From positions 186,001 through 250,000 of IMG/VR virus record IMGVR_UViG_3300024259_002152: a stretch of 64,000 nt of DNA; one strand, 5' to 3'. The notes under the pieces were generated by a model. It did not search any database, had not been told where the DNA came from, and saw only the letters and a list, made by a program, of their open reading frames with translations. The position numbers were made by a program, and so were the translations under genes. Of this stretch, positions 38,297-60,283 are shown piece by piece (the stretch's first letter is position 1; each line of letters opens with the position of its first letter).

Positions 38297-39406
38297 GTGA
38301 AAGTTGAAACCCCCTTATCTCTCAAGTATCGTCCTAAAAAATTATCTCAGGTAGTAGGGCAACCAGTAGTAGTTAGAGCATTTACTAATGCTTTCAAAAT
38401 AAATAATCTGCATCATGCTTATATTCTAGCAGGTCAATTTGGTTGCGGAAAAACGACAGTTGCTAGAATTGTTGCGGCAACTGAAAATTGTTTAGAGAAT
38501 AAAAAAGATCCATGTGGTAAGTGTAATAATTGTCAAGAAATTTTTGCTGGGAAATCCTATGAAGTTCTTGAGATAGATGCGGGAAGTGAAGGTAAGGTTG
38601 ATAATATCAGAGCATTACACAAATCTTTACATCAATGTCCCGTAGAATGCAAAACAAAATATGTTATTATTGATGAGGCACATTCTTTAACAGGTTCAGC
38701 AGCAGAAGCGTCTTTAAAGATGATAGAGGAACCTCCTCCTATGGTTAGATTTATCTTAGCCACTACTGAGCCACAGGCGTTTAAGGAAACCATTCATAGT
38801 CGTTGCATTATGTGGAGTTTCAACAAGGTTGGTAGGGCTGATATATTCAGTCATTTGCAAAATATTTCTCAGCAGGAGCAAATTGGTTGTGATGATAAAA
38901 CTCTTCAATTAATTGCCAGATATTCCAAAGGGTCAGTGAGAAATTCTTTACAACATCTTCAGAAAATTATGAATTATGTGGGAGATGATTCAATAACATA
39001 TGAATCTGCGGTAGAAGCTCTTGGAGTGATAGATGATGTATTATATTTTGATCTTTTCGATGGCATTATAGCAAAAGATGCCATGAAATGCTTTATGACT
39101 ATTAACAAGATATTTTGCGATGGTAAAGAAGCTAAATTGGTTATAGATGGAGTTTATGAGCATTTGAATAATTTGCTGGTTACGAGGACATGTCGAAAAG
39201 ATCTAGATTCTTTTGATTTTACACAGGAAGAAGCTAAGAGATATATACATCAAAACTCTACAATAGCTAAGAGTGGTGGAGATGATATACTAAGAATGAT
39301 GAACCTATTAAGCAATGTCTCATTTGGGGTAGAGTATAGTTTAAATCCAGCACAATTGCTGAATAAGTTTGCGGTAGAATCTATCCGTATGTTTGCTAAA
39401 AGATAG
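38297..39406 (+). CDS. dnaX: DNA polymerase III gamma/tau-like clamp-loader ATPase (gamma-length)
   Basis: KYRP...VVGQ, HAYILAGQFGCGKTT, PCGKCNNC, EIDAGS, IIDEAH, FILATTE, IHSRC. Confidence 0.92.
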   Translation: MKVETPLSLKYRPKKLSQVVGQPVVVRAFTNAFKINNLHHAYILAGQFGCGKTTVARIVAATENCLENKKDPCGKCNNCQEIFAGKSYEVLEIDAGSEGKVDNIRALHKSLHQCPVECKTKYVIIDEAHSLTGSAAEASLKMIEEPPPMVRFILATTEPQAFKETIHSRCIMWSFNKVGRADIFSHLQNISQQEQIGCDDKTLQLIARYSKGSVRNSLQHLQKIMNYVGDDSITYESAVEALGVIDDVLYFDLFDGIIAKDAMKCFMTINKIFCDGKEAKLVIDGVYEHLNNLLVTRTCRKDLDSFDFTQEEAKRYIHQNSTIAKSGGDDILRMMNLLSNVSFGVEYSLNPAQLLNKFAVESIRMFAKR

Positions 39407-39427: not shown

Positions 39428-39474
39428 TTTCAATCATATGTCGATATAAATGTGTGATTTATATATGATTGAAA
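39428..39474 (+). promoter_or_regulatory. Inverted repeat/hairpin abutting the sigma-factor SD
   Basis: TTTCAATCATAT (39428-39439) / ATATGATTGAAA (39463-39474) is a perfect 12-bp IR; inner ATAAAT/ATTTAT stem; contains TCGATATAAA. Confidence 0.6.
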
Positions 39475-39483
39475 GGAGTTCAT

Positions 39484-40203
39484 ATGGGTAAACGCAGACC
39501 CGTTAAGCGGATCTTTGGCCCACTTGAAAAACTAGAATATGAAGATTTAGTAGATGTTGTAAGAGGTAGATCGAGAACTAAAAGGAAAAATAACGCTTAT
39601 AATGAGATAGAGAAAAGAATAAAAGTCAAAGTATTTTATATTACAAGGCAATTTTATATTCCTGGTCTTAATTTTGATGATATATTGCAAGAAGCTTTGT
39701 TTGCTTTAAGATTTAAAGCTATTCCTGATTATGATAAAGATAAAGGACATGGTGATCGACCTTATCCTTTTGACAAATTCGCTATGCTTTGTATCAGGAG
39801 GCATCTATCAACTTTATTAAAAAGTAGTTTTCGTAATAAAGAGAAGGCCCTAAATACTAGTTTTTCTTTGGATCAAGATAGAAGTACCCACGATGACGAA
39901 AATTTATATTTAGTAGATATTCTTTCTGTCACAAAAGGTTCGTTAGTTGATAAGGTTGGACAGCAAGAGTATTATCGTAATTTGATAGAGAGATTATATA
40001 AAAGACTCTCCAAGTTGGAGAAAAATGTCTTTGTTTTGTATACTTGTAGATATTCATATGATGAAATAACTGATAAAATTAATAAGTTTTATAAGTCCCG
40101 AGGTAGAAAAAGAAAAGTAAATGTTAAAAGTGTGGACAACGCTTTGAGTCGAATTAAAATAAAAGCTAAAGAGATTTTTGATAAATATGATGGAGAGATA
40201 TAG
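39484..40203 (+). CDS. Sigma-70 family (SigH-like) RNA polymerase sigma factor
   Basis: FYIPGLNFDDILQEAL, FAMLCIRRHLSTLLK...KEKALN.S.SLD, SYDEI, KSVDNALSRIK; AGGAG SD before ATG 39484. Confidence 0.85.
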   Translation: MGKRRPVKRIFGPLEKLEYEDLVDVVRGRSRTKRKNNAYNEIEKRIKVKVFYITRQFYIPGLNFDDILQEALFALRFKAIPDYDKDKGHGDRPYPFDKFAMLCIRRHLSTLLKSSFRNKEKALNTSFSLDQDRSTHDDENLYLVDILSVTKGSLVDKVGQQEYYRNLIERLYKRLSKLEKNVFVLYTCRYSYDEITDKINKFYKSRGRKRKVNVKSVDNALSRIKIKAKEIFDKYDGEI

Positions 40204-40308: not shown

Positions 40309-41616
40309 ATGATTTTCGAAGTTAATAGAGAAGAATTCACAAGGGCTATTAAACCCGCTGTAGAGATTGCAACCAAAAACACACTCAAGGATTTCAAATA
40401 TGAGAATTTATTAACGATAAAAGCTGAACAGGATCAGGTTGTTTTGGTTTCTTATGGAGGCACATTAAGTATTGTCGCTCCTATATCAGGAAATAATTTT
40501 GGAGCACTAGATTATAGTTGCGAAGAAGAAGGGCAAACTACTGTTTATGCTGATGACTTATTGACATTTATGCAATCTCTTCCTAAAAGCTACGACAAAG
40601 TAAAGATTTCATTAGTGTCTAATCAGCTTAAATTATCTTCCGCTTCAAAGAAAACTGACGGCAAGAAGGCTAGTTCAGAACGATCTATGCCTACGGTGAC
40701 TGATATTGTTCGTCTTCCAAAAATTGGGACAACTTTTGACCAAGATATTGAATTGGATAGAGAGGTTTTTGTAAATGGTATTGATAGCGTCCTGTTTGCT
40801 CCAGCATACGAAGAAAAATATTTTTCTTATATGTGTATGTTATTTGAAGCAAGTTCTGGCACAGATCAAGAGATGAGATTTTCAGCAGGTTCAGGAGGAA
40901 GGTTTGCGATTAAATCTGTTAAAGGCAAGAATATAGTGCTGAATCAGAATGAAGCGAAGATGATTTTTCCAAAGAACAGTCTTTCTTCTATATTTAAGAT
41001 TTTATCAAGCGCAACAGAATCTTCCATTCGTATTAAATCTATAGGCGTAGATCAAACAAAAAATATTTCTGAGCAAATTCTGGTTGAGTGTGATGGAATG
41101 ACTATATGTGTATTTGGATTAGAGCATTTTACTAAATATCCTGATTTAAGTAAAATTTTAGCACATCAATATTCTAATAGAGTTTATAGTAGTTTGGAAG
41201 ATTGGCAGTCTATTGAGAAGACAATTGAGGGAACACGACACAGATGGAATGATAGTATTCATAATACGGAGATCATCATTGAAGAGAGTGATGAAGTTTT
41301 TAAAGTAACTCCTAAAACTCCTCATGCGAGTCCTACATTTATTGGAATGGTAGATACAAATGATTGTATTATCAAGGGTGATAAGATATGGTTCTGTTGT
41401 AATTCTGATTACCTGAGAGAGATGGTTGTTCAAGGTGGGGGTAAGGGTCGTATTCAGTTGAATTTTGAAAGTCAGTCGATATTGGAAGGGATAACAGATG
41501 ACAAACAGGCTCAGAAAATGATGAAACCAGTCCTGGTCAAATTTCCAGAAAATGTTGATGACGCCAAAAATACTGTTGATAACTTTTATATGTTCTTCTC
41601 AATTTCTACTAAATAA
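40309..41616 (+). CDS. dnaN: Divergent DNA polymerase III beta sliding clamp
   Basis: MIFEVNREEF N-terminus, KYPDLSKI and CNSDYL motifs at DnaN-like positions, size and context next to dnaX. Confidence 0.65.
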   Translation: MIFEVNREEFTRAIKPAVEIATKNTLKDFKYENLLTIKAEQDQVVLVSYGGTLSIVAPISGNNFGALDYSCEEEGQTTVYADDLLTFMQSLPKSYDKVKISLVSNQLKLSSASKKTDGKKASSERSMPTVTDIVRLPKIGTTFDQDIELDREVFVNGIDSVLFAPAYEEKYFSYMCMLFEASSGTDQEMRFSAGSGGRFAIKSVKGKNIVLNQNEAKMIFPKNSLSSIFKILSSATESSIRIKSIGVDQTKNISEQILVECDGMTICVFGLEHFTKYPDLSKILAHQYSNRVYSSLEDWQSIEKTIEGTRHRWNDSIHNTEIIIEESDEVFKVTPKTPHASPTFIGMVDTNDCIIKGDKIWFCCNSDYLREMVVQGGGKGRIQLNFESQSILEGITDDKQAQKMMKPVLVKFPENVDDAKNTVDNFYMFFSISTK

Positions 41617-42808: not shown

Positions 42809-43080
42809 TGGAAGAAATTTATAAAAGTGTACTACTATTGATCCATTCTCTAACTCAATTGTCTGGAACGACTTACAAGTATAAAGAGGAGCCGAATGAG
42901 GAGAATGGGGAAAAAATAGTTACAATAGTAGATAAATGTGAAAATAAGTTCTTGAAAGTGAAAGAAGAAATAGTTAGAATGGTTCAAGAAGTAGAAGATG
43001 GTCAAAAAACAGAAGAGATAGAAGAAACAGAAGAGATTGAGACAATCCCTACAGAACAAGGTTTTTTAATAAAGGAATAA
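42808..43080 (+). CDS. Acidic hypothetical protein
   Basis: 90-aa ORF, coupled start. Confidence 0.5.
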   Translation: MEEIYKSVLLLIHSLTQLSGTTYKYKEEPNEENGEKIVTIVDKCENKFLKVKEEIVRMVQEVEDGQKTEEIEETEEIETIPTEQGFLIKE

Positions 43081-43712: not shown

Positions 43713-43905
43713 GATTGCATTAGATATCCTCCCAAGTGGTCATATAAGATTTAGACGGGGAGATAGAGAATATAACAAGCGGATGAGAGAAATCATATCG
43801 TTCGTTGTTGATAATGACGAGACTGTTTTGAGAGAGATAGATGATTTCTTAATAGGATCAGAAGATGTAGAATTGTTAATAGGGGATACAATTCTCTGCG
43901 GATGA
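43699..43905 (+). CDS. Small hypothetical protein
   Basis: 68-aa ORF overlapping the upstream stop. Confidence 0.55.
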   Translation: MELSKIALDILPSGHIRFRRGDREYNKRMREIISFVVDNDETVLREIDDFLIGSEDVELLIGDTILCG

Positions 43906-43928
43906 TTATTCTATTTTGTTCTTTTTTC

Positions 43929-43950
43929 ACATCGCTCTCGACTGCGATGT
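43929..43950 (+). terminator. Stem-loop (possible terminator)
   Basis: ACATCGC / GCGATGT followed by TCTTT. Confidence 0.4.
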
Positions 43951-43958
43951 TCTTTAAT

Positions 43959-43992
43959 ATAGCCATATGGTTTAGATCATATGGCTATTTTT
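43959..43992 (+). terminator. Intrinsic terminator-like hairpin with TTAG loop
   Basis: ATAGCCATATG-GT-[TTAG]-AT-CATATGGCTAT followed by a T-run. Confidence 0.65.
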
Positions 43993-44001
43993 ATGAAATG
44001 A

Positions 44002-44046
44002 ATCTCCTAAGTCGATATATATAAAAAGTATATTGATTTAGGAGAT
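44002..44046 (+). promoter_or_regulatory. 18-bp hairpin sequestering the resolvase ribosome-binding site
   Basis: ATCTCCTAAGTCGATATA (44002-44019) pairs with TATATTGATTTAGGAGAT (44029-44046), with 2 G-U pairs; the right arm holds AGGAG. Confidence 0.7.
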
Positions 44047-44683
44047 GAGTGTGGCTAATAAATTTGAAGTTATTATAGGCGTAGATCCAGGAGTAGTTGG
44101 TGGCATATCTATTATTTATAAAAATGGAGTAATTGATATTAATAGAATACCAGTAAAAAAGGTAGTAGTTAATAAGAAAAATAAAAAAACCTATGATTTA
44201 GTTGGTATATCCGAGATATTTGAACCATTTATTAATAAAAAAGTTTTATTTGTCCAAGAGAAAGTATCATCACATCCTGGGGAAGGAAGCGTATCGGCGT
44301 TCAATTTCGGTCGATCTTCGGGATATACTATCGGTATGGCTCATGCTTTGGGTTTCGAGGTAGTAGAGGTGACTCCTCAAGCTTGGAAGAAACACTTTCC
44401 AGAGCTTGTTACTCAAGAGATATTAGTAAAAAAAGAAGAGATTAAGAAATTAAGAGTATTATCTAAAACATTAAAGGATAAACCCTCCCAAAAATTGAAT
44501 AAAAAAGAGATAGATAAGCTAAATAGGCAAATTAAGACGTTAGCCAAAGAAGAAGCTAGGAGTTTAGCTTCTTCTCTATATCCTCAATCAGCAGGTGAAT
44601 TTAAGCAGAAAAATAGTGATGGGATAGCAGAGAGCCTATTAATCTCATTATATGGTAGGGATAATCAAAATGAATTGGTTTAA
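44045..44683 (+). CDS. RuvC-like Holliday junction resolvase (phage type) with a coiled-coil insertion
   Basis: IIGVDPGVVGG, QEKV...GSVSAFNFGRSSG, VTPQAWKK, DGIAESLLI. GTG at 44051 fits SD spacing better than ATG 44045. Confidence 0.82.
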   Translation: MSVANKFEVIIGVDPGVVGGISIIYKNGVIDINRIPVKKVVVNKKNKKTYDLVGISEIFEPFINKKVLFVQEKVSSHPGEGSVSAFNFGRSSGYTIGMAHALGFEVVEVTPQAWKKHFPELVTQEILVKKEEIKKLRVLSKTLKDKPSQKLNKKEIDKLNRQIKTLAKEEARSLASSLYPQSAGEFKQKNSDGIAESLLISLYGRDNQNELV

Positions 44684-45691: not shown

Positions 45692-45864
45692 TGAAAGTAT
45701 GGAATTTTAAAAAACAAAAGATAGAGAATGGGACAGAGTCTCCTGGTTGTAATAGTGTAGATGGAGTTAAAGATTATAAGCCCGTCTTTATGAGTTATAA
45801 GGAGAACGGAGAAAATAGAGTAATTTCAATTAAGGACAATCAAAATGAAACAGATAGAAAGTGA
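45691..45864 (+). CDS. 57-aa ORF missed by the track
   Basis: ATG overlaps the upstream TAA; MKVWNFKKQKIENGTESPGC...NETDRK*; fills the gap and overlaps the next start. Confidence 0.5.
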   Translation: MKVWNFKKQKIENGTESPGCNSVDGVKDYKPVFMSYKENGENRVISIKDNQNETDRK

Positions 45865-46034: not shown

Positions 46035-48548
46035 GTGAATAAAGATTTTATCTTATCGGTTTTGAAGAAAGTGAGATTTTTGTTTCCTTTCGTGGTGGAC
46101 TCACCTCATGAGGTTCTTGGGGAGTTGGCGCAAATAATTCCATCTCGATATATGATATTTCCTTGTGATATTATAGATCTTAGACAGTTTATTAGAGAGG
46201 ATAAGATTTCATCTTCGAATCCTATACTGTTTTTTTCTCAAAAATTTGCAGATAAATATTTGAAAGAATATTCAGTGTTTTTAGTTCTTGACTCTCATGT
46301 AGATGTTGTGAATGATCTATACGGAGGTGTTCAAGTTAATTATTGCGATGAACTCCCTTTGTCTCATCTACTTGTTAGAATCCTTATTAACGAACCATCT
46401 GCAAATAACTCTTTCGATGTTGTTAAAAACTTAATGGAAGAATTTAATTTAGGGGTAGAATGTTTGGTATCAAATAGTGTTCCTGGTATTTCTGGTCCTA
46501 GCAAAAAATTGTCATATATAATAGAACCTAAAAAGGCACAAAGAACTATAGGTGTTCCTTCAGACCTCCCTCTTACTCCAAAAGAAAACGATATATTTGA
46601 GTTCTTGAGACAAGTTAAAAAAGATTACAATCTTGATATTCAAATGAGGGTGGCAGGAGGATGGGTCAGAGATAAGATTCTTGGTAAAGAAAGTGATGAT
46701 ATAGATATAGCTGTAGATATGCCAGGTTATGATTTTGCTAAATTGGTGGCCCAAGCTGCCTTTAAGAGCAATATATCTCATGACCCTAAAGCGTATAATG
46801 TTAGTTTAGACAAAGATGCAGACCCAGCCACGAGAGTTGATGATGACAATCTGATGGTAGGGGCTGTAGATTTATTTGGTCAGAAAATAGAATTTGTTCC
46901 AATGAGAACAGAGCACTATCCTGATCCTCAAAGCAGAAAACCTAAAATTACCACAACGAATGATCCAAGAGAAGATGTGAAAAGAAGAGATCTTACAATC
47001 AATTCTATTTATTATAATATAGATACTGGTCAAGTAGATGATTTTGTAGGAGGAGTAGAGGATTTAGGTTTGGAAAGCGGAAAAATGATATTAAGAACAC
47101 CAGATGATGCCAAAAAAACTTATGAAGAAGATCCATTAAGGTTGCTGAGAGCTTTGCGCTTTCATAGTCGTTATCCCAATAGCGAATTAGATCCAGATAT
47201 AATCAAATCAATGTCAGACCCAGACATACAAGAATCTTATGTCAAGAAAGTTGCTGCGTCAAGAGCTGGACCTGAGATAATGAAAATGTTAGTGGGGGAT
47301 AATCCTACTGCATCTTTAAAACTATTATTTGAGAGCGGTTTATATAGGAAAGTTTTTGATGTTCCTGCAATGGGGAATATTAATCCTGATGGTATAGAGA
47401 TGGATCAAAAATCTCCTTATCACAAATATAGTTTATTAGATCATACGATAGAAGTGGTGTCTAATCTTAATAGTATTATGAAAGAGAATGAAGAGCCCGA
47501 TGATATGAGAGGACTTATGAATCTTGCTGCTGTTTTTCATGATTTCGGAAAAATGGATAACAAAGTTGCAAGACCTCATAAACGTCCAAGAGTTCCTGGA
47601 CATACTACTTATGTTGGGCACGAAAGAAGCTCAGAAGATATGGCAGAAGCCATATTGAAATCTATTAACGTGCCAAAAGAAAAAAGAAATTTAGTTAATA
47701 CTGTTATTAAAACACATATGTATCCTCATGATGCTTCGGATTGGAGTAGTAAAAATAAAGGTCCAGGTAATTTTATTGAAAAATTAAAAATAAAAGGCAA
47801 AGGTGGAGTAGATGATTTGTGGAAGTATGTGTTTTATCATGGTCAAGCTGATGCCATGTCGTCTAATCCTGAGACATATGATGAGCAAAAATATAATCAA
47901 GGAAAAGAGTGGTTTGAGCAATATCGTTCTGAACCATCGACAGAATTTACCAGATTTCAAGGAACGTTAATAGATGGTAACGTAGTGGATAATCTCAGGC
48001 AGCAAATAGAGCAGCAGAGACAAGTTCGTATCAGAAAAAACATTATCAGTGATGCTTTACATTTTATTTTACAACAGCAATATACAGGTAATATTGATAT
48101 GTCTTTTGCTTCATTGCCAGAAGGAGCAGATAGAGAGAAAGCTATGAATAAGTCTATTAATGATGCTACTAATAAAGTCAAAGGGTGGATGCTTAATGTG
48201 CATAATAAATATTTAGAACCACCTAAGGGAGGACAGGTTATGGGGTCTAATTGGTTTAAAAAAGTAAAAACTGCACAAGTAGCTGCTCTATCAGGAGATG
48301 TGCAAACTCAAGATCCAGAGATAAAGAAAGGTCCAAAAGAAGCTCTTCCAAAATATCAAGTTGGTATGAAGGTAAGAGATAGAAGAAATTCTGTATCTCA
48401 ACAACAGACCTATGGGGTGGTAGAAGCAATAAAAGGTAATAAAATGAAGATAGTTTGGAATCCTGATAGTAAAGAAAAAAGACAAGAAGAAGTTGTCGAT
48501 ATGGTGGAAAATACTGAAATTTTATCTTTAATTGTTGCGGAGGTATAA
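46035..48548 (+). CDS. cca: Class II CCA tRNA nucleotidyltransferase with HD domain and N- and C-terminal extensions
   Basis: RVAGGWVRD...DDIDIA, EFVPMRTE, DVKRRDLTINS, EDPLRLLRALRF, LLDHT, FHDFGK, YVGHE. Confidence 0.9.
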   Translation: MNKDFILSVLKKVRFLFPFVVDSPHEVLGELAQIIPSRYMIFPCDIIDLRQFIREDKISSSNPILFFSQKFADKYLKEYSVFLVLDSHVDVVNDLYGGVQVNYCDELPLSHLLVRILINEPSANNSFDVVKNLMEEFNLGVECLVSNSVPGISGPSKKLSYIIEPKKAQRTIGVPSDLPLTPKENDIFEFLRQVKKDYNLDIQMRVAGGWVRDKILGKESDDIDIAVDMPGYDFAKLVAQAAFKSNISHDPKAYNVSLDKDADPATRVDDDNLMVGAVDLFGQKIEFVPMRTEHYPDPQSRKPKITTTNDPREDVKRRDLTINSIYYNIDTGQVDDFVGGVEDLGLESGKMILRTPDDAKKTYEEDPLRLLRALRFHSRYPNSELDPDIIKSMSDPDIQESYVKKVAASRAGPEIMKMLVGDNPTASLKLLFESGLYRKVFDVPAMGNINPDGIEMDQKSPYHKYSLLDHTIEVVSNLNSIMKENEEPDDMRGLMNLAAVFHDFGKMDNKVARPHKRPRVPGHTTYVGHERSSEDMAEAILKSINVPKEKRNLVNTVIKTHMYPHDASDWSSKNKGPGNFIEKLKIKGKGGVDDLWKYVFYHGQADAMSSNPETYDEQKYNQGKEWFEQYRSEPSTEFTRFQGTLIDGNVVDNLRQQIEQQRQVRIRKNIISDALHFILQQQYTGNIDMSFASLPEGADREKAMNKSINDATNKVKGWMLNVHNKYLEPPKGGQVMGSNWFKKVKTAQVAALSGDVQTQDPEIKKGPKEALPKYQVGMKVRDRRNSVSQQQTYGVVEAIKGNKMKIVWNPDSKEKRQEEVVDMVENTEILSLIVAEV

Positions 48549-59572: not shown

Positions 59573-59625
59573 TAGTAAGATAGTTAGTTTAGTTTAGTCT
59601 AGTTTAGTTTAGTAAGGAGTTACAA
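59573..59625 (+). repeat. (T)TTAG tandem-repeat leader running into the SD
   Basis: TAG TTAG TTTAG TTTAG TCTAG TTTAG TTTAG TAAGGAGTTACAA-ATG. Confidence 0.9.
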
Positions 59626-60243
59626 ATGAAAAAAAACAAGGCGGAATTAGTGTTTATTGTGGACCGTTCCGGCTCCATGATGTCAATTGCTTCTGATATG
59701 CAGGGAGCAATCAAGTCAGTTCTATCAGACCAAAAGAAAAACCTCAAAGGTGATATAAATGTGACCTTTGTACGTTTTGACTCTGAATACGAGGAAGTAT
59801 TCAGTGGTCGATCTATCAATGATGTTTCTGAAACGGATTTAGAAATTAATCCAAGAGGAATGACATCTTTGTTGGATGCAATGGGAAAAACTCTTAATAC
59901 TTTTGAAAGAAGATTTTCTGAAACAGATGAGAAGAATAGGCCTAAGAGGGTTTTATTCCTTATTATTACTGATGGACAAGAAAATAATAGCAAAGAGTAT
60001 TCGAGAGATAAAGTTTTTGGCATGATTAAAACTTTGGAAAGAGATCACGAATGGGGATTTACTTTTATTGGTGCTAACCAAGATGCTATTTCTGAAGGTA
60101 GTAGTATTGGTGTAGCAAGAGGAAAATCTCTTAATTATGCAGCTTCGACGAAGGGAGTTAGGTGTATGGCACGATCTGTTAGTAATTTTACAGCAGATTA
60201 TCTTGAGAGTGGTGATGCAAGTTACTCTGACGGTGATGAGTAA
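59626..60243 (+). CDS. von Willebrand factor A domain protein
   Basis: VDRSGSM (DxSxS MIDAS), PRGMTSLLDA, ITDGQENNSKEY, FTFIGANQDA. Confidence 0.9.
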   Translation: MKKNKAELVFIVDRSGSMMSIASDMQGAIKSVLSDQKKNLKGDINVTFVRFDSEYEEVFSGRSINDVSETDLEINPRGMTSLLDAMGKTLNTFERRFSETDEKNRPKRVLFLIITDGQENNSKEYSRDKVFGMIKTLERDHEWGFTFIGANQDAISEGSSIGVARGKSLNYAASTKGVRCMARSVSNFTADYLESGDASYSDGDE

Positions 60244-60245
60244 TT

Positions 60246-60283
60246 TTTAGTTTAGTTTAGTTTAGTTTAGTAAGGAGTTACAA
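60246..60283 (+). repeat. (TTTAG)5 leader plus identical TAAGGAGTTACAA SD block
   Basis: Shares 29 bp AGTTTAGTTTAGTAAGGAGTTACAAATGA with 59601-59629. Confidence 0.9.

What the first reader, a model, noticed from the sequence alone, without database searches (positions are those of the whole stretch)
44002..44053. T4-gene-49-style RBS-sequestering hairpin on a RuvC-like resolvase
Seen: an 18-bp stem (16 Watson-Crick + 2 G-U) buries AGGAG and the first ATG, and the left arm and loop contain TCGATATATATAAAA. Established: T4 gene 49 (endonuclease VII, a junction resolvase), e and soc are translationally blocked on early transcripts by such hairpins and released by a late promoter inside them. Inference: the same timing logic arose convergently for an unrelated resolvase fold, which also independently supports a lytic-phage identity.
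Basis: partly seen in the sequence, partly recalled or inferred. Interest (0 to 1): 0.7.

Follow-up and report, generated by a model that had tools for sequence, protein, structure and literature searches.

The report
Conserved ribosome-site-hiding hairpin before phage resolvase
A strong RNA hairpin that hides the ribosome-binding site of a Holliday-junction resolvase gene is real and is kept in every related marine giant phage examined, so it very probably blocks translation, but whether a promoter inside it releases the block, as in phage T4, could not be shown.

Summary
Window 44002-44046 folds into a 19-bp hairpin (16 Watson-Crick pairs, 3 G·U; -25 kcal/mol, z -7.4) whose 3' arm contains AGGAG (44040-44044).

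The buried ATG (44045) abuts the Shine-Dalgarno sequence. Relatives and the database gene call place the real start at GTG 44051, six bases after AGGAG.

The gene is a MOC1/RuvC-type resolvase. The host genome is a 351-kb uncultivated seawater jumbo phage.

All 14 related leaders, including one from a 548-kb phage, keep a 14-23 bp hairpin that sequesters the Shine-Dalgarno sequence. They show compensatory changes and + strand-specific G·U pairs. In 12 of 14 an intrinsic terminator ends 5-12 nt upstream.

A translational block on full-length leaders is well supported (about 0.85). The T4 gene-49 logic of an internal promoter is plausible but unproven (about 0.4).

- **For an internal promoter:** the terminator leaves no other room for a promoter. 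The 5'-arm box GTCGATAT plus a TATAAA-like run is conserved beyond what pairing needs. The box recurs in a hairpin before the phage's SigH-like sigma gene.
- **Against:** TATAAATA is not enriched in this genome. None of its three recurrent promoter-like motifs is present in the leader. No RNA data exist.

I file it as a new member of a known kind.

The parts
43959..43993 (+). Intrinsic terminator (stem 43959-43988 followed by a T-run), ending about 9 nt before the hairpin
   Evidence: Terminator scan. It folds at -15 kcal/mol. An equivalent terminator with a different stem sequence is present in 12 of 14 related leaders.
44002..44020 (+). 5' arm of the hairpin. It holds the anti-Shine-Dalgarno CTCCT (44004-44008) and the conserved box GTCGATAT (44011-44018).
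   Evidence: TCGAT is present in 11 of the 12 aligned relatives, and is kept in L062 where GTC is unpaired.
44021..44027 (+). Loop. Together with the end of the 5' arm it forms the run TATATATAAAAA (44016-44027), the candidate -10 region of a hypothetical internal promoter. The predicted transcription start would be about 44025-44035.
   Evidence: Read directly from the sequence. This is inference only: no match to a validated promoter class of this genome.
44028..44046 (+). 3' arm of the hairpin, containing the Shine-Dalgarno AGGAG (44040-44044) and the non-conserved ATG (44045-44047)
44051..44683 (+). MOC1/RuvC-like Holliday-junction resolvase gene, 210 aa, starting at GTG six bases after AGGAG
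   Evidence: PHROG 1770 at E 1.4e-23. The family profile matches MOC1 structures at E 3e-24. The database gene call is 210 aa and the relatives' ATG aligns here. D12, E70, D190 and E194 are invariant in 67 homologues.
43902..44024 (+). 40-codon ORF that overlaps the stop of the upstream gene and ends in the hairpin loop. Considered as a coupling leader peptide and rejected.
   Evidence: Listed. Not conserved: the closest relative L001 has no start codon in any frame across the 5' arm.
39428..39478 (+). Second, weaker hairpin of the same style in front of the sigma-factor gene. The same box appears as GTCGATATAAATG (39440-39452), partly bulged out of the stem.
   Evidence: Covariance-model hit of 21.9 bits. 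The fold is -21 kcal/mol. The box is conserved in L073 and L075, both with an exact TATAAATA.
39484..40203 (+). SigH-like sigma-70 family factor gene, lying between the clamp-loader and beta-clamp genes
   Evidence: NCBIfam SigH-type models at E 6e-24; PDB 3mzy sigma-H at E 1e-5; weak Pfam hits to sigma-70 regions 2 and 4. Neighbouring genes.

Best explanation
The element is a cis-acting mRNA leader hairpin that controls translation of a MOC1/RuvC-type Holliday-junction resolvase in an uncultivated marine jumbo phage.

**Step 1, well supported (about 0.85).** On any transcript that carries the whole leader, the 5' arm (CTCCTAAGTCGATATAT) pairs with the 3' arm. This locks AGGAG into a stem of about -23 kcal/mol, so 30S subunits cannot bind and the resolvase is not made.

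**Step 2, inferred.** An intrinsic terminator 9 nt upstream stops most transcription coming from the early-type promoter at 42952. Only rare read-through RNAs reach the gene, and those are translationally silent.

**Step 3, inferred (about 0.4).** Productive mRNA starts at a promoter embedded in the 5' arm and loop: the conserved GTCGATAT box followed by a TATAAA-like run. The transcription start would be about 44025-44035. This RNA lacks the 5' arm, leaves the Shine-Dalgarno sequence free, and also serves the genes downstream. That is the logic of T4 genes 49, e, soc and I-TevI, applied here to a resolvase of a different fold. Which polymerase holoenzyme would read that box is unknown.

The confidence given (0.42) is for the whole three-step scheme. 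Step 1 alone stands at about 0.85.
For: **Structure.**

**Conservation of the fold.** 14 of 14 related leaders keep a 14-23 bp hairpin with the Shine-Dalgarno sequence in the 3' arm, at 42-79% protein identity and including a 548-kb phage.

**Compensatory changes**.
- L062: T-A to G-C.
- L067: A-T to C-G.
- L065: A-T to T-A.
- L066: a paired G/C insertion.
- L064 and L016 have quite different sequences but the same fold.

**Strand specificity.**
- The + strand fold is more stable than the - strand fold in 13 of 14 leaders, with 36 G·U pairs in total.
- The covariance model scores 68.7 bits on + against 32.2 on -.

**Terminator.** It is conserved in position, not in sequence, in 12 of 14 leaders.

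**Room for a promoter.**
- The early-type promoter at 42952 lies upstream of that terminator.
- The next candidate motif matches downstream are only at 45858 and 48931, inside ORFs and beyond the resolvase gene.
- A promoter for the resolvase gene itself has nowhere else to sit.

**The box.**
- The lower stem and the GTCGAT box are conserved far more than the flanks.
- GTCGAT is kept where it is unpaired (L062).
- The same box sits in a second hairpin before the sigma gene in three phages.
- Five of nine upstream CGATAT sites lie 38-42 nt before a start codon.

**Genome context.**
- Hairpins that sequester the Shine-Dalgarno sequence are in excess genome-wide.
- Others precede HNH and LAGLIDADG endonucleases and a DNA methylase, the same gene types that T4 controls this way (PMC2988022).
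- In at least seven other leaders the anti-Shine-Dalgarno segment lies within or just after the recurrent motif AAAGGWTTT, upstream of a predicted start.
Against: - There are no transcript data: no RNA run was listed.
- TATAAATA is neither strand-biased nor enriched upstream of starts.
- No sigma-70-type promoter is found in 43996-44050.
- None of the three recurrent motif classes of this genome occurs in the leader.
- The distance between TCGA and the TATAAA-like run varies between relatives.
- Some leaders (L067, L016) have no TATAAA-like run.
- In L076 the best -10-like hexamer sits too close to the Shine-Dalgarno sequence to give a useful mRNA.
- TCGA followed by AT-rich sequence shows no strand asymmetry in intergenic DNA (7 against 5). 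CGATAT is only about twofold enriched (p about 0.04).
- The phage sigma factor is SigH-like with regions 2 and 4, not gp55-like.
Confidence: 0.42

Rival explanations
1. Permanent throttle, with no switch. The terminator and the hairpin together simply keep a potentially toxic junction nuclease at a very low, constant level. The few ribosomes that catch the hairpin breathing on read-through transcripts make all the resolvase the phage needs.
For: - No promoter can be recognised in the leader.
- The terminator-plus-hairpin tandem is conserved as a unit.
- Other such hairpins in the genome precede nucleases and a methylase.
- From my own knowledge, junction resolvases are toxic when over-expressed.
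Against: - A stem of about -23 kcal/mol should cut initiation by orders of magnitude, which is harsh for a constant setting.
- It does not explain why GTCGAT and both G·U pairs are conserved at the sequence level when any pairing bases would serve.
- It does not explain why the box recurs unpaired in the sigma leader.
- The resolvase gene and its immediate downstream neighbours would then depend wholly on terminator read-through.
Confidence: 0.22
2. RNase III-type processing site. The long perfect stem is cut by the host double-strand RNase, as at the T7 R-sites and in the lambda N leader. Cutting separates the 5' arm from the Shine-Dalgarno sequence and activates translation, and leaves a protective hairpin end on the upstream RNA.
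For: - The stems are 14-23 bp and nearly perfect.
- The two G·U pairs are conserved at fixed positions in the lower stem, as expected for a protein-recognised helix.
- The element sits at an operon boundary directly after a terminator.
Against: - No RNase III gene was found in the phage, and the host is unknown.
- Several relatives have stems of only 14-17 bp, short for that enzyme.
- Processing still needs read-through of the terminator.
- Nothing here tests cleavage.
Confidence: 0.13
3. Operator for a trans-acting regulator. The GUCGAUAU box, shared by the resolvase and sigma-factor leaders, is bound by a phage or host protein or small RNA. Binding stabilises or opens the hairpin and so co-regulates the two genes after transcription.
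For: - The box is conserved in 13 of 14 resolvase leaders and 3 of 3 sigma leaders.
- It is paired in one context, and bulged or in the loop in the other.
Against: No candidate regulator was identified. A DNA-level reading of the box as a promoter or operator fits the same data. The box is short and AT-rich.
Confidence: 0.12
4. DNA-level palindrome. The inverted repeat would be a protein-binding site or cruciform with no RNA function.
For: The sequence is an inverted repeat, and the - strand also folds at -12.9 kcal/mol.
Against: - All the imperfections are G·T on the + strand, which would be C·A mismatches on the other strand. There are 36 G·U pairs across the leaders.
- The + strand is more stable in 13 of 14 leaders.
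- The repeat always ends on the Shine-Dalgarno sequence, and the arms covary in the way RNA does.
Confidence: 0.04

Closest known systems
T4 translational hairpins of genes 49, e, soc and I-TevI (also segB, and mobE of phage Aeh1)
   Same: A stable hairpin sequesters the Shine-Dalgarno sequence of a gene that is needed late or is harmful, here a junction resolvase. The 5' arm carries an AT-rich TATA-like run. Similar hairpins in the same genome precede homing endonucleases. The hairpin is conserved among relatives.
   Different: No T4-type late promoter (TATAAATA) is used in this genome, and no gp55-like factor was identified. No internal transcription start has been shown. An intrinsic terminator sits directly upstream. 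The resolvase has the RuvC/MOC1 fold, not that of endonuclease VII.
RNase III-processed leaders of T7 early genes and lambda N
   Same: A long stem at a gene boundary occludes the ribosome-binding site.
   Different: The stems here are perfect, without the internal loops typical of T7 sites. Cleavage was not tested, and no phage RNase III was found.
MOC1 / RuvC Holliday-junction resolvases
   Same: The family profile matches solved MOC1 structures at E 3e-24 over residues 6-119. Acidic residues are invariant at four positions.
   Different: There is a lysine-rich insertion of about 65 residues (roughly residues 120-185). No Pfam model matches.

Membership tests
T4-type RBS-sequestering hairpin with an internal late promoter | A stable RNA helix contains the Shine-Dalgarno sequence and/or the start codon | tested here: met
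   19 bp, -25 kcal/mol, z -7.4; AGGAG lies in the 3' arm. The same holds in 14 of 14 relatives.
T4-type RBS-sequestering hairpin with an internal late promoter | A promoter lies inside or just 3' of the 5' arm, so that its transcript cannot form the helix | tested here: inconclusive
   A conserved GTCGATAT box and a TATAAA-like run sit in the 5' arm and loop. They match no promoter class of this genome, and there are no RNA data.
T4-type RBS-sequestering hairpin with an internal late promoter | The promoter is of the T4 late type (TATAAATA, read by gp55) | tested here: not met
   The window has TATAAAAA. TATAAATA occurs 47 times on + and 51 on -, and 8 against 7 times near starts. The sigma factor found is SigH-like. 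A gp55 homologue was not specifically searched for.
T4-type RBS-sequestering hairpin with an internal late promoter | Longer transcripts from upstream promoters run through the leader and are translationally silent | not testable with these tools
   An early-type promoter at 42952 lies upstream, but a terminator intervenes. Read-through cannot be measured here.
Structured cis-regulatory RNA | Pairing is kept through sequence change in relatives, on one strand only | tested here: met
   Three aligned pairs change on both sides, one paired insertion occurs, and two relatives have divergent sequences with the same fold. The sample is small: 14 sequences.
Intrinsic terminator (the upstream element) | A G+C-containing stem-loop followed by a T-run | tested here: met
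   present in 12 of 14 relatives.
RuvC/MOC1 resolvase family (the regulated gene) | Sequence-profile membership and conserved catalytic acidic residues | tested here: met
   PHROG 1770 at E 1.4e-23. MOC1 structures at E 3e-24. D12, E70, D190 and E194 are invariant. Their mapping onto the MOC1 active site was not checked on a structure.
RNase III processing site | A double-stranded stem of about two helical turns that is cleaved by RNase III | not testable with these tools
   Stem length is 14-23 bp. No phage RNase III was found. Cleavage was not tested.

The most novel reading that the evidence does not exclude
The GTCGATAT box is a new regulatory signal of a clade of 300-550 kb marine phages. 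It would be either a promoter class read by an unidentified holoenzyme form or an RNA operator. It sits inside hairpins that hide the ribosome-binding site and ties expression of the phage's SigH-like sigma factor to that of its junction resolvase. The genome-wide set of such hairpins, many with the anti-Shine-Dalgarno segment in or next to a promoter-like motif, would then mean this lineage times translation by promoter choice on a far larger scale than T4 does.
Probability: 0.2. Interest if true: 0.6.

Novelty: new member of a known kind. Interest (0 to 1): 0.4.

Why it matters
Control of translation by hiding the ribosome-binding site in long transcripts is textbook for T4 but has hardly been looked for outside cultivated T-even phages. 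Here the same design sits on a different resolvase fold. It is conserved across an uncultivated clade of marine jumbo phages. It is also one of a dozen or so such leaders in a single genome, several of them before nucleases. That gives a concrete, testable handle on gene timing in phages that have no cultured host, and a short conserved box to test as a promoter or operator.

Tried and rejected
- **Leader-peptide coupling.** The 40-codon ORF 43902-44024 ends in the loop, so its translation would open the 5' arm. It is not conserved: L001 has no start codon in any frame there. Rejected.
- **Repeated element.** Fuzzy searches and a covariance-model scan of the whole 351-kb genome find one strong copy only. 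The weaker hits are other hairpin leaders.
- **T4 late promoter as a genome-wide class.** No enrichment.
- **A general promoter class of TCGA followed by AT-rich sequence.** No strand asymmetry and only about twofold enrichment of CGATAT. Not established.
- **Methylation or restriction meaning of TCGA.** TCGA is not notably avoided (ratio 0.73). No support.
- **SigH-type promoter in the leader.** A GAAT at 44000-44003 has no matching -35 element and is absent from relatives. Rejected.
- **Transcript evidence.** No RNA run was listed.
- **Population variants.** Contigs of four other seawater DNA runs are identical over 43850-44250, so they add nothing.
- **Phage collection searches.** Nucleotide search of the phage collection found nothing, and protein search found only distant hits.
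- **Plain MAFFT plus RNAalifold.** This recovered only 5 pairs because the loops misalign. A covariance-model alignment and per-sequence folds were used instead.

Full report
**What is there.**
- The window is bases 186001-250000 of a 350,866-bp seawater metagenome contig. It has 33% G+C, about 93% of ORFs lie on the + strand, and IMG/VR classes it as a virus record.
- At 44002-44046 the + strand RNA folds into a single hairpin. The 19-bp stem pairs 44002-44020 with 44028-44046, with 16 Watson-Crick pairs and 3 G·U. The loop is 7 nt.
- The energy is -25 kcal/mol against -7.7 ± 2.3 for shuffles (z -7.4). It also forms in a 221-nt context.
- An intrinsic terminator ends 9 nt upstream (stem 43959-43988 plus a T-run).

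**The start codon.**
- The ATG follows AGGAG with no spacer.
- In the closest relative (79% protein identity) that triplet is AAT, and its ATG aligns with GTG 44051.
- The public gene call is also the 210-aa product from GTG 44051.
- The real start therefore lies six bases after AGGAG, just outside the main stem.
- The Shine-Dalgarno sequence, not the start codon, is what is consistently buried.

**The gene.**
- There is no Pfam hit, but PHROG 1770 (Holliday junction resolvase) matches at E 1.4e-23.
- A profile of 67 homologues matches solved chloroplast MOC1 resolvases at E 3e-24.
- D12, E70, D190 and E194 are invariant.
- It is a RuvC/MOC1-fold resolvase with a lysine-rich insertion.

**Conservation.**
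- I recovered 13 further leaders: L001 and L016 from IMG/VR, L062-L071 from public assemblies, and L076 from a complete 548-kb phage. Protein identity to the window ranges from 42% to 79%.
- All 14 fold into a 14-23 bp hairpin of -10.7 to -22.9 kcal/mol with the Shine-Dalgarno sequence in the 3' arm.
- Pairing is kept through change on both sides at three aligned pairs and through one paired insertion. L064 and L016 have largely different sequences with the same fold.
- The + strand fold beats the - strand fold in 13 of 14 leaders, and the stems hold 36 G·U pairs.
- A covariance model scores 68.7 bits on the + strand and 32.2 on the - strand.
- This is an RNA element of the sense strand, not a DNA palindrome.
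- Twelve of the 14 leaders have a terminator ending 5-12 nt upstream. The terminator stem sequences differ freely, which shows that the intergenic DNA has diverged.
- Gene order around the locus is conserved.

**What the hairpin does.** A stem of this strength over the Shine-Dalgarno sequence should block initiation on any RNA that carries both arms. I hold this at about 0.85. How the block is relieved is the open question.

**Evidence for the T4-like answer (an internal promoter).**
- *Room for a promoter.*
  - The early-type promoter at 42952 (TTGAAA, 17 nt, TAGAAT) feeds three small genes and then meets the terminator.
  - Between the terminator and the Shine-Dalgarno sequence there are only about 50 nt, nearly all hairpin.
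  - Past the leader, the only candidate promoter-like matches are at 45858 and 48931, inside ORFs and beyond the resolvase gene.
  - A promoter for the resolvase gene itself can only overlap the 5' arm.
- *Conservation beyond pairing.*
  - The lower stem is conserved at the sequence level far beyond what pairing requires. CTCCTAAGTCGATA is identical in the window and in the 548-kb phage, where the protein is only 50% identical.
  - TCGAT is present in 11 of 12 aligned leaders.
  - It remains in L062, where GTC is unpaired, and in L069, where its partner is mutated.
- *A second copy of the box.*
  - The same box, GTCGATATAAAT(G/A), lies in a second hairpin directly before the phage's sigma-factor gene (window 39428-39478). 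There it is bulged or in the loop.
  - It is conserved in two other phages, both with an exact TATAAATA.
- *Position of CGATAT.* Five of the nine CGATAT sites upstream of genes lie 38-42 nt before the start codon.
- *The design is common in this genome.*
  - Hairpins that sequester the Shine-Dalgarno sequence are about threefold in excess.
  - Others precede an HNH endonuclease, a LAGLIDADG endonuclease and a DNA methylase.
  - In at least seven leaders the anti-Shine-Dalgarno segment lies within or just after a recurrent motif, AAAGGWTTT, upstream of a predicted start.

**Evidence against it.**
- TATAAATA is not used as a class here.
- The genome's three clear intergenic motifs are absent from the leader. 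They are:
  - TTGAAA-GTGAAAGT...TATAAT, about 40 sites;
  - AATTCCAGACAA[CT]G, 22 sites, all at 285-350 kb;
  - AAAGGWTTT.
- The sigma-70 scan finds nothing in the leader.
- The spacing between TCGA and the TATAAA-like run varies between relatives, and some relatives have no such run.
- In L076 the best TATAAT would start transcription inside the Shine-Dalgarno sequence.
- The wider motif of TCGA plus AT-rich sequence is not statistically established.
- No RNA run could be listed, and DNA contigs from other samples show no variants.
- I put the internal promoter at about 0.4.

**Rivals.**
- A permanent throttle on a toxic nuclease (0.22).
- Activation by RNase III-type cleavage (0.13). No phage RNase III was found.
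- A trans-acting factor that binds the box (0.12).
- A DNA palindrome (0.04), disfavoured by the G·U pattern.
- A leader peptide ending in the loop (ORF 43902-44024). It is not conserved and is rejected.

**Comparison with what is known.**
- T4 genes e, soc, 49 and I-TevI are the documented precedents (PMC3014915 section 29; PMC2988022 section 12).
- This element shares the defining helix and its conservation.
- It fails the T4-specific feature, a TATAAATA late promoter.
- The key feature, an internal start, remains untested.
- It works like the T4 hairpins at the level of sequestration. Membership in the full dual-transcript scheme is not established.
- The claim that the hairpin supports a lytic lifestyle does not follow from it.

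**Verdict.** This is a real, conserved, strand-specific translational control hairpin. It is a new member of a known kind, of moderate interest, with a testable conserved box shared with the sigma-factor leader.

Noticed in passing
window 39484-40203: A SigH-like sigma-70 family factor gene (NCBIfam E 6e-24) sits between a DnaX-like clamp loader (38297-39406) and a beta-clamp-like gene (40309-41616). It has its own leader hairpin carrying the GTCGATATAAAT box.
   Followed up: partly
window 26529, 27934, 34848, 40243, 42952, 59514, 63477, and about 35 more sites in the genome: A strong promoter-like class, TTGAAA-GTGAAAGT-N-TATAAT, lies upstream of many genes. AAAGTGAA occurs 20 times in intergenic DNA against 1 expected. 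It looks like a sigma-70-type early promoter with a conserved spacer word.
   Followed up: partly
G000 285806-349561 (outside the window): A second motif class, AATTCCAGACAA[CT]G(A/C)GTTT, has 22 copies, all on the + strand. They lie 30-230 nt, mostly 30-90 nt, before mostly small genes in the last 65 kb of the contig, near tRNA genes. It is probably a separate temporal promoter class.
   Followed up: partly
G000 2166, 19134, 22257, 25171, 31603, 52629, 95820, 346605; window 36482: The motif AAAGGWTTT lies 62-82 nt before start codons. Twelve bases further on there is often nnn(G/T)AAT. From memory this resembles the Bacillus sigma-H promoter consensus, so these may be the phage sigma's promoters. 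The T-run of the motif often pairs with the downstream ribosome-binding site.
   Followed up: partly
G000 334892-334943, 142740-142801, 295055-295125, 151420-151476, 263080-263150: Other hairpins that sequester the Shine-Dalgarno sequence precede an HNH endonuclease, a LAGLIDADG endonuclease, an N6/N4 DNA methylase, a two-domain glycosyltransferase and a papain-like protease.
   Followed up: partly
window 59575-59620 and 60247-60280: Tandem (T)AGTTTAGTT repeats directly before the ribosome-binding sites of two adjacent genes (starts at 59626 and 60284). Both leaders end in the same ...GTTTAGTAAGGAGTTACAAATG.
   Followed up: no
whole genome G000: The palindromes CCGG (0.13 of expectation), GTAC (0.22) and ACGT (0.33) are strongly avoided, which suggests restriction avoidance. 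The coding strand has a strong G over C excess (20.8% against 12.1%).
   Followed up: no
window 46035-48548: An 837-aa CCA-adding/poly(A) polymerase-family enzyme with an HD domain and long N- and C-terminal extensions. It is conserved downstream of the resolvase in all relatives.
   Followed up: no
window 44410-44600 (resolvase residues about 120-185): A lysine-rich insertion of about 65 residues, relative to MOC1/RuvC, is conserved across the 67 homologues. Its function is unknown.
   Followed up: no
L065 917-1336: One relative carries an extra gene of the T4 endonuclease V type (Pfam Pyr_excise) inserted just upstream of the terminator-hairpin-resolvase unit. The unit itself is left intact.
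   Followed up: no
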